From positions 62,001 to 126,000 of IMG/VR virus record IMGVR_UViG_3300036770_003657: DNA of 64,000 bases. The stretch is one strand, 5' to 3'. Made by a program: the position numbers and the translations under genes. The notes under the pieces were generated by a model. The model was not told the origin of the DNA. It did not search any database and saw nothing but the letters and a program-made list of their open reading frames with translations. Of this stretch, positions 18,750 through 19,610 are shown in pieces (the stretch's first letter is position 1; each line of letters starts with the position of its first letter).

Positions 18750-19190
18750 ATGATGTCATGGACACATCAAGGCCAACTAGTCACAGAAATTCCAGAGGAA
18801 TACATAGGCTTCGTTTATCTTATAACCAATACAATATCAGGCAAAATGTATATTGGCAAAAAACTATCAAAGTTTGCCAAAACTACTTACAAGGTCGTAA
18901 AATTAAAAAATGGCACTAAGAAACGTAAAAAAATTAAAGGCAAAATAGAAAGTGATTGGCAAGAATACTACGGCTCAAATGACTCACTAAAGGCAGATGT
19001 AATAAAATTAGGTCCAGAAAAATTCCAACGAGAAATATTATACTATTGTAAATCAAAGGCAGAATGTAGTTACGTAGAGGCAAGAGAACAATTCTCAAGG
19101 CGTGTATTGGAAAGCGATGACTACTATAACGGACAAATTAGTGTTCGTGTTCATGGTAGTCATATCAAAGGCAAAATTTTAAACGGTTAG
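18750..19190 (+). CDS. Stand-alone GIY-YIG endonuclease
   Basis: 146 aa with GFVYLITN...YIGKK (GIY-YIG variant), YYGS, a conserved E in YVEAREQF and a C-terminal YYN. Confidence 0.8.
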   Translation: MMSWTHQGQLVTEIPEEYIGFVYLITNTISGKMYIGKKLSKFAKTTYKVVKLKNGTKKRKKIKGKIESDWQEYYGSNDSLKADVIKLGPEKFQREILYYCKSKAECSYVEAREQFSRRVLESDDYYNGQISVRVHGSHIKGKILNG

Positions 19191-19610
19191 GCTGGCGTAG
19201 GCCTAAATTATTCATACGCCCTAAACCTGGACAAATGTATCGCAGGGACGGAAAACTCACCGCCGTAGTGAGTACTCAGCCACTACCCGCAAGGATGACG
19301 ATCACTTAACTGCCGTGATTTGGCTGTTTGAATAGGATAAAGGCCAAAAGACGCTGATTTTCAGCACGTTTTACAAATATGTTAGCGTATATTTGTAAAG
19401 CCGCCGTTGTATGAAGACTGTGCTCGAGGTACCGGACAACCGCCTCTGTAATGCACTAACGCTAATGACTAAGCAACTCGCATAATGTTCTTCGCCCTGT
19501 GTGGGCGAAGTGTGACGTCACAATCTGCATAATATTTAAAAAACAAAAGACGAAAAAACTTTTTAGGACGACTAAGTCCTAAAAAAGAGTGAGCGTAGCA
19601 TCACTCTCCT
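19187..19610 (+). ncRNA. Candidate large structured ncRNA (family not recognised)
   Basis: About 420 nt with no ORF in the track. About 46% GC over 19201-19500 by hand count, visibly above the AT-rich flanking genes. It holds at least 8 hairpins, a GCAA tetraloop and two predicted pseudoknots. The strand is inferred from the operon. Confidence 0.7.
19560..19607. terminator. Tandem hairpins closing the non-coding region
   Basis: TTTTTAGGAC-gactaa-GTCCTAAAAA (19560-19585) and AGAGTGA-gcgtagca-TCACTCT (19586-19607). No canonical plus-strand U-tract. Confidence 0.4.

What the first reader, a model, noticed from the sequence alone, without database searches (positions are those of the whole stretch)
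19187..19610. Unrecognised, about 420-nt, pseudoknotted RNA at the end of the gp55-gp47-gp46-nuclease operon
Seen: this is the only long non-coding gap in the window, about 46% GC over 19201-19500 in an AT-rich genome. Predicted helices are CCTG/CAGG (19226/19242), ACTCAC/GTGAGT (19255/19268), and CAGCCA/TGGCTG (19277/19321) enclosing CC-GCAA-GG and ATCAC/GTGAT. Further helices are GCTGA/TCAGC, an 11-bp TTTACAAATAT/ATATTTGTAAA stem (19370-19399), GTGC/GCAC with nested GAGGT/GCCTC, and CTTCGCCC/GGGCGAAG (19490-19510). The loop of the 11-bp stem, GTTAGCGT (19381-19388), is complementary to ACGCTAAT 70 nt downstream (19459-19466), giving an 8-bp pseudoknot. Inference: a functional large ncRNA or ribozyme-like RNA. 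It does not match tRNA, tmRNA, RNase P or intron cores as I know them.
Basis: partly seen in the sequence, partly recalled or inferred. Interest (0 to 1): 0.85.

Follow-up and report, generated by a model that had tools for sequence, protein, structure and literature searches.

The report
Known phage RNA motif, full-length form
The gap holds a real, strongly conserved, pseudoknotted non-coding RNA of uncultured giant phages, but its first 140 bases are the already catalogued "Polynucleobacter-1" RNA (Rfam RF01718) whose function is still unknown, so it is not unrecognised, only incompletely described.

Summary

The RNA is not unrecognised. Rfam matches 19190-19329 (+) to RF01718, Polynucleobacter-1 RNA, at 106.6 bits (threshold 37), over the full model. 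The authors' 2010 alignment file already marks a 3' "tail" and a tentative pseudoknot.

What I add:
- The element is one RNA of about 355 nt (19189-19541), found in more than 100 IMG/VR phage contigs and always in the same place. It follows a 141-147 aa GIY-YIG gene downstream of gp55-gp47-gp46.
- The window's source is probably a 400-kb jumbo phage contig. The RNA is absent from 50,697 deposited phage genomes.
- G.U pairs show that the + strand is the RNA.
- Two direct 13-nt repeats flank hairpin P12. Their variable bases are identical in 77 of 77 sequences, which I cannot explain.
- This repeat module also ends two other, unrelated non-coding "bodies" that occupy the same slot in sister phages.

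Function is untested. My best guess is a trans-acting scaffold that presents two identical binding sites.

The parts
18750..19190 (+). Upstream gene: a 146-aa protein that is a GIY-YIG catalytic domain only (SegE-like). The RNA follows this gene in every locus where the upstream side is present.
   Evidence: Pfam PF19835, E 9e-33. PHROG 447. Same synteny in 33 of 34 loci and in the MAG-binned contigs.
19190..19329 (+). 5' domain = Polynucleobacter-1 RNA (Rfam RF01718). Helices: P1 19195-19199/19215-19219; P2 19227-19233/19238-19245; P3 19255-19260/19268-19273; P4 19277-19282/19321-19326; P5 19287-88/19293-94; P6 19300-19305/19315-19320.
   Evidence: cmscan 106.6 bits against a gathering score of 37, E 4e-22, model positions 1-141 of 141. 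Covariation.
19330..19352 (+). Conserved purine-rich linker (GUUUGAA ... AAAGGC.AAAAGA). RNAalifold pairs its GGC with the GCC in the P3 loop, but these bases are invariant, so covariation cannot test the pairing.
19353..19365 (+). P7, a variable hairpin.
   Evidence: Compensatory changes in 4 of 5 pairs.
19369..19400 (+). P8, a 12-bp hairpin. Its loop (19381-19388) carries the 5' strand of pseudoknot PK1.
   Evidence: All 12 pairs show two or more Watson-Crick types; G.U 127 against A.C 13.
19382..19465 (+). PK1: 19382-19387 (UUAGCG) pairs with 19460-19465 (CGCUAA).
   Evidence: 98.6% paired, 6 of 6 pairs with changes on both sides. MI-APC top pairs.
19406..19440 (+). PK2 (new): 19406-19410 (GUUGU) pairs with 19436-19440 (ACAAC), which lies in the loop closed by P10.
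   Evidence: 19408:19438 UA 45 / CG 32; 19409:19437 GC 51 / AU 21 / GU 5; 19410:19436 UA 56 / GC 9 / AU 4. 97.2% paired.
19420..19456 (+). P9 (19420-19423/19453-19456) enclosing P10 (19426-19429/19443-19446), together with the invariant box GGUACCGG....ACCGCC.
   Evidence: P9 98.6% and P10 97.9% paired, both with compensatory changes.
19474..19487 (+). R1, the first copy of the direct repeat xyA-CUC-nn-AUrAw (CAACTCGCATAAT plus G).
   Evidence: Variable positions identical to R2 in 77 of 77 sequences.
19490..19510 (+). P12, an 8-bp G+C-rich hairpin between the two repeats.
   Evidence: 96% canonical; U.G 31 against A.C 3.
19521..19534 (+). R2, the second copy of the repeat xyA-UCU-nn-AUrAw (CAATCTGCATAAT plus A). 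The conserved RNA ends a few bases later, at about 19541.
19542..19623 (+). Poorly conserved tail. It contains two window-specific hairpins (19559-19586 and 19589-19606) and AATAAATA (19612-19619), which resembles a T4 late promoter, just before the next gene.
   Evidence: The promoter reading is inference.
19624..20523 (+). Downstream gene. It is hypervariable between loci but keeps an N-terminal motif that resembles a capsid-targeting sequence (MKLNELITEQ).
   Evidence: No Pfam or PHROG hit.

Best explanation
Identity (shown). Window 19189-19541 (+) is the full-length gene of the RNA catalogued as Polynucleobacter-1 (Rfam RF01718). It is a non-coding RNA of about 355 nt with two domains, carried by uncultured T4-related jumbo myoviruses. 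It sits at a fixed position after a small GIY-YIG gene at the end of the gp55-gp47-gp46 gene block.

Expression (inferred). The RNA is probably made by read-through of that transcription unit, since no promoter of its own was found. It ends before the next gene, a hypervariable gene that looks like an internal head protein gene.

Fold (shown by covariation). The 5' domain has P1-P6. The 3' domain has P7-P10 locked by two pseudoknots. The RNA ends in the module R1 - hairpin P12 - R2.

Mechanism (inferred, not tested). The pseudoknotted body is a rigid scaffold. The working end is the terminal module, which displays two identical single-stranded 13-nt elements. I propose that these bind two copies of, or two sites on, one sequence-specific partner, most simply a nucleic acid that pairs with them. 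On this reading the RNA acts in trans as an adaptor or decoy, not as a leader that controls a neighbouring gene.

My own probabilities: about 0.97 that it is this RNA family and a functional RNA; about 0.35 for the dual-site trans-acting mechanism. The confidence value given for this explanation (0.55) is a blend of the two.
For: Family:
- cmscan gives 106.6 bits against a gathering score of 37, over the full model.
- The family's original members lie downstream of the same gene family and carry the same 3' sequence boxes.

One RNA of two domains:
- nhmmer profiles find the 5' domain in 100 loci, the 3' domain in 110 and both in 99, always in the same order, strand and spacing.
- Where nhmmer missed the 5' part, the Rfam covariance model found it.

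RNA-level selection on the + strand:
- 37 of 75 RNAalifold pairs have compensatory changes.
- The 3' domain is 83.3% paired against 69.8% in shuffles (0 of 500 shuffles reach it). Its covariation score is 0.405, against 0.177 in shuffles and at most 0.18 when partners are slid.
- G.U pairs number 448 against 114 A.C pairs; in P6 the ratio is 128:0 and in PK1 53:1.

Phage origin:
- Synteny is constant.
- The GIY-YIG protein matches at 100% identity on a 399,796-bp IMG/VR contig.
- All six hits in the genome collection are phage contigs binned into MAGs.

The terminal module as the working end:
- The variable cores of R1 and R2 are identical in 77 of 77 sequences across at least 8 haplotypes.
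- The same holds in divergent members.
- The module is the only part shared by three otherwise different non-coding bodies in the same slot.

Against cis control of the next gene: that gene is unrelated from locus to locus. Hairpins and an ATAAATA motif lie between the RNA and the gene.
Against: - There is no expression data. Transcript ends, stability and independent existence are all inferred.
- No partner was found. There is no complementary sequence in cis, and none above chance in the 64-kb window.
- The window covers only about one sixth of a roughly 400-kb genome, and hosts could not be searched.
- Identity between two repeats could have other causes, such as processing sites, parallel strand contacts or DNA-level sites.
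- The MI-APC and Fitch counts are not fully corrected for phylogeny or recombination, and R-scape was not available.
Confidence: 0.55

Rival explanations
1. Cis-acting element of the surrounding transcripts. On this reading it is a structured 3' UTR that blocks exonucleases or directs processing of the gp55-gp47-gp46-GIY-YIG message. Alternatively it is a leader or riboswitch-like regulator of the downstream internal-protein-like gene, with R1 and R2 as alternative pairing partners or processing sites.
For: - The RNA starts at the stop codon of the GIY-YIG gene and no sigma-70-like promoter lies directly upstream.
- Weinberg et al. scored the motif as possibly cis-regulatory.
- The repeat module always sits next to the downstream gene, whatever RNA body precedes it.
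Against: - A 355-nt RNA with two pseudoknots and many invariant unpaired bases is far more than stabilisation requires.
- The downstream gene differs from locus to locus.
- No sequence in the tail or the start of that gene is complementary to the repeats.
- Cultured phages with the homologous GIY-YIG gene manage without any such RNA.
Confidence: 0.2
2. RNA cofactor or guide of the adjacent minimal GIY-YIG nuclease. On this reading the domain-only nuclease, which has no DNA-binding domain, is aimed by the neighbouring RNA, and the two identical repeats read both arms or both strands of a target.
For: - Adjacency is strict: the RNA begins 0-45 nt after the nuclease stop codon in all loci, including L054 and L034, where the genes further upstream differ.
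- The protein is only the catalytic domain, residues 4-130 of 146.
- The repeats vary quickly between phages, as specificity elements would.
Against: - Homologues of the same length (138-146 aa, 40-47% identity) occur in 457 deposited phage genomes. The five loci inspected have no large gap and no RF01718.
- At least one close homologue (L303) has no RNA.
- The repeat haplotype does not co-vary with any protein column beyond background; the most informative site ranks 202 of 207.
- No RNA-guided GIY-YIG enzyme is known to me.
Confidence: 0.08
3. A ribozyme, either self-cleaving or self-processing, or another catalytic RNA. R1 and R2 would be two equivalent reaction sites, so that the 47-nt hairpin segment is excised or circularised.
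For: - The RNA is large, has multiple pseudoknots and has many invariant unpaired nucleotides.
- Two identical sites flank a hairpin.
Against: - No Rfam ribozyme or intron model matches, even at E up to 10.
- No activity test was possible.
- Most large bacterial or phage RNAs of unknown function have not turned out to be ribozymes (my own knowledge).
Confidence: 0.08
4. The terminal repeat module works as DNA, for example as a recombination or cassette-exchange site, a nuclease target, or an origin-type protein binding site. It would border the hypervariable internal-protein slot, and only the body upstream would be an RNA.
For: - The module is shared by three different bodies and adjoins a hyperplastic gene slot.
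- Direct repeats that stay identical are typical of sites read by one protein.
Against: - Hairpin P12 between the repeats shows U.G 31 against A.C 3, which indicates selection on the + strand RNA.
- The constant CTC/TCT difference argues against homogenisation by recombination.
- The motif occurs nowhere else in the window.
Confidence: 0.07

Closest known systems
Polynucleobacter-1 RNA motif (Rfam RF01718; Weinberg et al. 2010, PMC2864571)
   Same: Window 19190-19329 matches the whole 141-position model at 106.6 bits. The helices are the same, and the RNA lies downstream of the same gene family. The authors' own alignment file contains the same 3' boxes and defines 'tail' and 'tailpknot' sub-alignments.
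   Different: - The Rfam model stops at the 5' domain, whereas the conserved RNA is about 2.5 times longer.
- The 2010 pseudoknot carried '?' marks, meaning no covariation at that time. Here it is strongly supported.
- PK2 and the R1-P12-R2 module are not annotated in the portion of the 2010 file I read.
- In 2010 no example was known from a phage. Here every context is a phage.
cow-rumen-2 RNA (Rfam RF02947)
   Same: Window 19369-19465 aligns end to end with the model. Both have a hairpin with a UUAGC loop followed by AGCCGCC, an inner GGA..ACC hairpin and GUAA.
   Different: The score is 22 bits against a gathering score of 66 (E 0.11), and several model helices are broken. At most it is a distant relative of the pseudoknot core. 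It is not a member.
Large structured RNAs of unknown function linked to phages (GOLLD, ROOL) or to nucleases (HEARO/IscB omega RNA)
   Same: Comparable size, complex fold, phage or mobile-element setting, and position next to a nuclease gene.
   Different: No sequence or structure match to any of their Rfam models. The neighbouring enzyme is a GIY-YIG domain whose homologues work without an RNA. There is no hypervariable guide segment, only two short repeats that change together.
Repeat-based RNAs (type III antitoxin ToxI arrays, CRISPR mini-arrays or solitary repeats)
   Same: Direct repeats that stay identical within a genome while differing between genomes.
   Different: There are only two partial copies, 13-28 nt long, with a fixed internal difference (CUC against UCU). 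The sequence between them is a conserved hairpin, not a spacer. No ToxN-like or Cas gene is adjacent.

Membership tests
Rfam RF01718 Polynucleobacter-1 RNA | Covariance-model score at or above the curated gathering score (37 bits) over the full model. | tested here: met
   106.6 bits, E 4e-22, model positions 1-141 of 141, not truncated.
Rfam RF01718 Polynucleobacter-1 RNA | The consensus helices of the model are formed and maintained by compensatory change. | tested here: met
   P1 99.5%, P4 98.9% and P6 99.5% canonical, with several Watson-Crick types per pair. P2 and P3 are 78-88% canonical.
Rfam RF01718 Polynucleobacter-1 RNA | Location downstream of the GOS11034 / P-SSM2 gene 218-like gene, as described by the authors. 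| tested here: inconclusive
   The RNA always follows one conserved GIY-YIG gene that has cyanophage homologues: 339 Synechococcus and 22 Prochlorococcus phage records. I could not check that this gene is GOS11034 or PSSM2_218 itself.
Rfam RF01718 Polynucleobacter-1 RNA | The 3' 'tail' with pseudoknot that is present in the authors' full alignment. | tested here: met
   The boxes GGUACCGG and AAGUGUGAC occur in 7-8 of the 16 original sequences. The file also defines 'tail' and 'tailpknot' subfamilies. The window has the same elements.
Rfam RF02947 cow-rumen-2 | Score at or above the gathering score (66 bits). | tested here: not met
   22 bits, E 0.11.
Group I / group II introns, RNase P RNA, tmRNA, tRNA, known small ribozymes, GOLLD, ROOL, HEARO | A match to the family covariance model, or an ARAGORN call. 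| tested here: not met
   No hit in 19100-19700 even at E up to 10 with permissive filters. No tRNA or tmRNA anywhere in the window.
Guide RNA of an RNA-guided nuclease (omega RNA type) | The nuclease family depends on the RNA, and the RNA carries a variable guide segment matched by a target. | tested here: not met
   Homologous nucleases occur without the RNA. No target was found. There is no covariation between protein and repeats. Biochemical dependence is not testable here.
Type III toxin-antitoxin RNA / CRISPR mini-array | A tandem array of full repeats next to a ToxN-like or Cas gene, with variable spacers in the CRISPR case. | tested here: not met
   There are two partial repeats only. 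The sequence between them is a conserved, covarying hairpin. The neighbours are a GIY-YIG gene and a putative internal protein gene.

The most novel reading that the evidence does not exclude
The R1 - hairpin - R2 module is a new kind of dual-site recognition device. On this reading, two identical single-stranded elements are held by a pseudoknotted scaffold and read one nucleic-acid partner twice, for example both arms or both strands of a target. Jumbo phages would use it for RNA-directed targeting or as a decoy, possibly together with the adjacent minimal GIY-YIG nuclease. The exchangeable bodies (variants A, B and C) would be alternative scaffolds for the same device.
Probability: 0.12. 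Interest if true: 0.9.

Novelty: new member of a known kind. Interest (0 to 1): 0.58.

Why it matters
Polynucleobacter-1 has been in Rfam since 2010 as a 141-nt motif of unknown function, named after a bacterium.

This locus changes that picture. The real unit is an RNA of about 355 nt with two pseudoknots, and it belongs to abundant uncultured freshwater jumbo phages. More than 8000 relatives of the neighbouring protein were found in metagenomes. That size and complexity place it in the small class of large, complex-folded RNAs, the class that has repeatedly produced ribozymes or new RNA-protein machines.

Two findings give concrete ways to study its function:
- Two direct repeats change in lock-step.
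- The repeat module is retained while the RNA body is swapped.

For annotation, the Rfam model could be extended, and its taxonomic label corrected to phage.

Tried and rejected
1. Folding energy as evidence. The z-scores are -3.3 (+ strand) and -4.0 (- strand), which does not discriminate. I used covariation instead.
2. blastn against 50,697 deposited phage genomes found no match, even at E up to 10. The RNA is therefore not in cultured phages at this sensitivity.
3. My first DNA pattern, built on the 5' domain, was too loose. Only about 34 of 120 loci were true.
4. Cultured phages with the homologous GIY-YIG gene (Melnitz, V45v66, ACP17, phiN3, B23) have no RNA there.
5. A search for a complementary partner of R1/R2 found nothing. 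I looked in cis by alignment, without alignment, and across the 64-kb window with Watson-Crick plus G.U pairing.
6. R2 read as a promoter, with a GTGAC box plus ATAAT. The spacing is wrong for sigma-70, and the motif is not enriched elsewhere in the window.
7. A local helix between the 3' end of R1 and the segment before R2 is present in some clades only, so I rejected it as a general feature (by eye).
8. An RNase P-like reading of the variant C body has no Rfam support.
9. Covariation between the repeat haplotype and the GIY-YIG protein is at background level.
10. I tried to reach the Polynucleobacter chromosome copy (NC_009379) through a protein search.
12. GGUACC as a dimerising palindrome: 6 of 36 sequences have GGUACA with no compensating change.
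Full report
**Observation**

The region 19191-19623 lies between a 146-aa ORF (18750-19190, +) and a 299-aa ORF (19624-20523, +). It is the only stretch of at least 150 nt in the 64-kb window with no ORF of 50 aa or more on either strand. Its G+C content is 0.46, against 0.36 for the window.

- A late sigma factor, gp55 (PHROG 12791, 3e-74).
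- gp47, SbcD-like.
- gp46, SbcC-like.
- A small ORF.
- A protein that is only a GIY-YIG domain (PF19835, 9e-33).

Folding energy alone is not informative, with z-scores of -3.3 on the + strand and -4.0 on the - strand.

**It is a catalogued RNA**

A scan of the whole window against Rfam 15 at curated thresholds gives exactly one hit. Window 19190-19329 (+) matches RF01718, Polynucleobacter-1 RNA, at 106.6 bits. The gathering score is 37, the E-value is 4e-22, and all 141 model positions are matched (alignment). No tRNA, tmRNA, intron, RNase P or ribozyme model matches, even at E up to 10.

The only paper in the library that names the motif is Weinberg et al. 2010 (PMC2864571). Its supplement makes four points:
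- The motif had 16 examples, from aquatic metagenomes plus Polynucleobacter sp. QLW-P1DMWA-1.
- Most lie downstream of a gene family with possible homology to a cyanophage P-SSM2 gene.
- No purified phage carried it.

The authors' annotated alignment file contains the boxes GGUACCGG and AAGUGUGAC in the flanks of 7-8 members. It also defines sub-alignments called 'tail' and 'tailpknot'. Their structure lines mark the stems I call P7-P10, and a 7-bp pseudoknot flagged '?' for lack of covariation. The Rfam model keeps only the 5' domain.

**Extent and distribution**

Two pattern scans of IMG/VR were followed by nhmmer with profiles built from a first alignment. They found the 5' domain in 100 loci, the 3' domain in 110 and both in 99, always in the same order, strand and spacing. 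Where nhmmer missed the 5' part, the Rfam model found it.

Conservation runs from about 19189 to about 19541. Of the copies found, 88 are full length, 82 are unique, and 76 remain as representatives at 97% identity.

In 33 of 34 loci examined in detail the order is:
- gp47, gp46 and a small ORF;
- the GIY-YIG gene (61-78% identical to the window's);
- the RNA;
- a + strand gene that differs between loci;
- a small ORF on the - strand;
- a baseplate gene on the - strand.

A scan of 185,579 species genomes gave six true hits. All are short MAG contigs with the same phage synteny, so they are phage DNA binned by mistake.

The window's GIY-YIG protein is found at 100% identity on a 399,796-bp IMG/VR contig. 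Other carriers reach 262-355 kb. The closest cultured gp46 is from the Pseudomonas jumbo phage PA5oct, at 49% identity.

Deposited phage genomes have no match to the RNA, even at E up to 10. The GIY-YIG family is widespread in them: 457 records, at most 47% identical, often mislabelled 'NAD synthetase'. However, the five loci I inspected have neither the gap nor the RNA.

**Structure**

RNAalifold on 26 sequences predicts 75 pairs, 37 of them with compensatory changes.

An all-against-all mutual-information scan (APC-corrected) on 77 representatives puts Watson-Crick helices at the top.

| Pair | Counts |
|---|---|
| 19384:19463 | AU 68, UA 4, CG 2, GC 2 |
| 19385:19462 | GC 67, AU 10 |
| 19386:19461 | CG 61, UA 16 |
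| 19387:19460 | GC 58, AU 17, GU 2 |

The same scan reveals a second pseudoknot. The strand 19406-19410 pairs with 19436-19440, which lies in the loop closed by P10:

| Pair | Counts |
|---|---|
| 19408:19438 | UA 45, CG 32 |
| 19409:19437 | GC 51, AU 21, GU 5 |
| 19410:19436 | UA 56, GC 9, AU 4 |

The counting tool was run on a 36-sequence alignment of the 3' domain:
- 83.3% of cells are paired, against 69.8% in shuffles (0 of 500 shuffles reach this).
- The covariation score is 0.405, against 0.177 in shuffles and at most 0.18 when partners are slid.
- PK1 is 98.6% paired, with all six pairs changed on both sides.
- PK2 is 97.2% paired, P9 98.6% and P10 97.9%.

Over all helices, G.U pairs number 448 against 114 A.C pairs. 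The ratios are 128:0 in P6, 127:13 in P8 and 53:1 in PK1. The + strand is therefore the RNA.

These statistics do not fully correct for relatedness, and R-scape was not available.

**The repeats**

The same scan showed something I did not expect. Six column pairs at a constant offset of 47 nt co-vary by identity, not by complementarity.

- R1 is 19474-19486, CAACTCGCATAAT.
- R2 is 19521-19533, CAATCTGCATAAT.
- Both have the form xyA-YYY-nn-AUrAw and lie on either side of hairpin P12.

The four variable core positions are the same in R1 and R2 in 77 of 77 sequences. These sequences span at least eight haplotypes. About 37 changes are inferred on a tree built from the other columns, and shuffles reach at most 28 of 77. 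YYY is always CUC in R1 and UCU in R2, which argues against simple homogenisation by recombination.

Identity also holds more widely:
- In divergent members, such as L188 with AGUUGAA in both copies and L054/L034 with AGGAUAAU in both.
- In the 2010 sequences, by eye.

I found no complementary partner:
- None in cis from -70 to +130.
- None above chance in the 64-kb window.

The motif is not a general motif of this genome. The haplotype does not track the GIY-YIG protein. I cannot explain this feature.

**A slot with exchangeable bodies**

I took the 80 closest GIY-YIG loci in IMG/VR, at 65-100% identity:
- 58 carry the two-domain RNA.
- 9 carry a different 5' region of about 190 nt, joined to the same distal part (PK2/P10 box, R1, hairpin, R2). 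In these, a 9-bp long-range helix of unrelated sequence replaces PK1. Rfam finds no RF01718 in them.
- 5 carry yet another non-coding stretch of about 450 nt with no Rfam match. It still ends in the module, with ACAUGAA in both repeats.
- 1 (L303) has no gap at all.
- The remainder are cut off by contig ends.

A regular expression for a matched repeat pair hits only the six true loci among 30 control loci, a total of 415 kb. The terminal module is therefore the constant element of the slot.

**What it most likely does**

What is shown:
- This is a conserved, structured RNA on the + strand, specific to one phage clade, with a fixed genomic place.

What is inferred:
- It is transcribed with, or from within, the early/middle replication-recombination block, because no promoter was found directly upstream.
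- It ends before the next gene.

That next gene is hypervariable, but nearly every version begins M(K/R)(I/V/L)x(E/D)(I/L)(I/L)xE. This resembles the capsid-targeting sequence that is the only conserved part of the diverse T4 internal proteins (PMC3012670; the exact T4 sequence is from my memory).

The downstream gene changes while the RNA does not, and the module persists while the body changes. I therefore favour a trans-acting RNA whose rigid body presents two identical single-stranded sites to one partner, at about 0.35.

The rivals are:
- A cis-acting UTR or processing element (0.2).
- A cofactor of the GIY-YIG nuclease (0.08). This is weakened by homologues of the same length that lack any RNA, and by the absence of protein-repeat covariation.
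- A ribozyme with two equivalent reaction sites (0.08).
- A DNA-level role for the module (0.07). This is weakened by U.G pairs in P12.

**Comparison and verdict**

The RNA is a member of RF01718 by every testable criterion. It is not a member of cow-rumen-2: 22 bits against 66, although the shared hairpin-loop and box order may reflect distant kinship of the pseudoknot core.

It resembles GOLLD, ROOL and HEARO only in being a large structured RNA of mobile elements.

I classify it as a new member of a known kind, and the description of that kind can now be extended and re-attributed to jumbo phages. Interest is moderate to high for RNA specialists, because of the lock-step repeats and the modular slot.

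Noticed in passing
window 19624-20523 (+), and the equivalent gene in loci L002-L111: The gene after the RNA is unrelated from phage to phage (189-719 aa). Nearly all versions nevertheless begin M(K/R)(I/V/L)x(E/D)(I/L)(I/L)xE (MKLNELITEQ here). This resembles the capsid-targeting sequence and protease site of T4 internal head proteins. It is probably a hyperplastic slot for injected proteins.
   Followed up: partly
L312 1930-2290; L274 1930-2290; L325 1930-2330; L318 2210-2580; L306: Sister phages carry two other non-coding bodies, with no Rfam match, in the same slot after the GIY-YIG gene. Both end in the same R1-hairpin-R2 module. In L303 the slot is absent.
   Followed up: partly
L188 3911-4304 and 5169-5240: A related phage contig carries a permuted tmRNA (RF04321, 92.5 bits) and a tRNA about 4 kb upstream of its copy of the RNA. 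The window itself has no tRNA or tmRNA.
   Followed up: no
window 18750-19190: This 140-aa GIY-YIG family is labelled 'NAD synthetase' in PHROG 447 and in many GenBank phage records. That looks like a propagated misannotation. It is a conserved gene of T4-like cyanophages and relatives (457 deposited records, more than 8000 metagenomic relatives), not a sporadic homing endonuclease.
   Followed up: partly
whole window: The GIY-YIG protein is found at 100% identity on IMGVR_UViG_3300036770_003657, a contig of 399,796 bp. The window therefore very likely comes from a jumbo phage of about 400 kb. The closest cultured gp46 is from Pseudomonas phage PA5oct (49%).
   Followed up: partly
L229-L232, L241, L246 (genome collection): Phage contigs with this locus are binned into MAGs named Polynucleobacter, Flavobacteriales, Bacteroidetes and Bifidobacterium. 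These are likely binning contaminants, or in the Polynucleobacter case a hint at the host.
   Followed up: partly
window 19190-19203: 19191:19202 co-varies (GC 63, AU 11). GGC at 19190-19192 pairing with GCC at 19201-19203 would form a small extra pseudoknot with P1. This pairing is not in the Rfam structure line shown.
   Followed up: no
window 19511-19522: A perfect 12-nt palindrome, TGTGACGTCACA, lies just before R2. It is specific to this window and not conserved in relatives.
   Followed up: no
window 19308, 19314-19315 and 19345: Bases in the P6 loop co-vary with the base after the conserved AAGGC of the linker (for example 19308/19345: AA 43, UU 20). This could be a tertiary contact or merely clade structure.
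   Followed up: no
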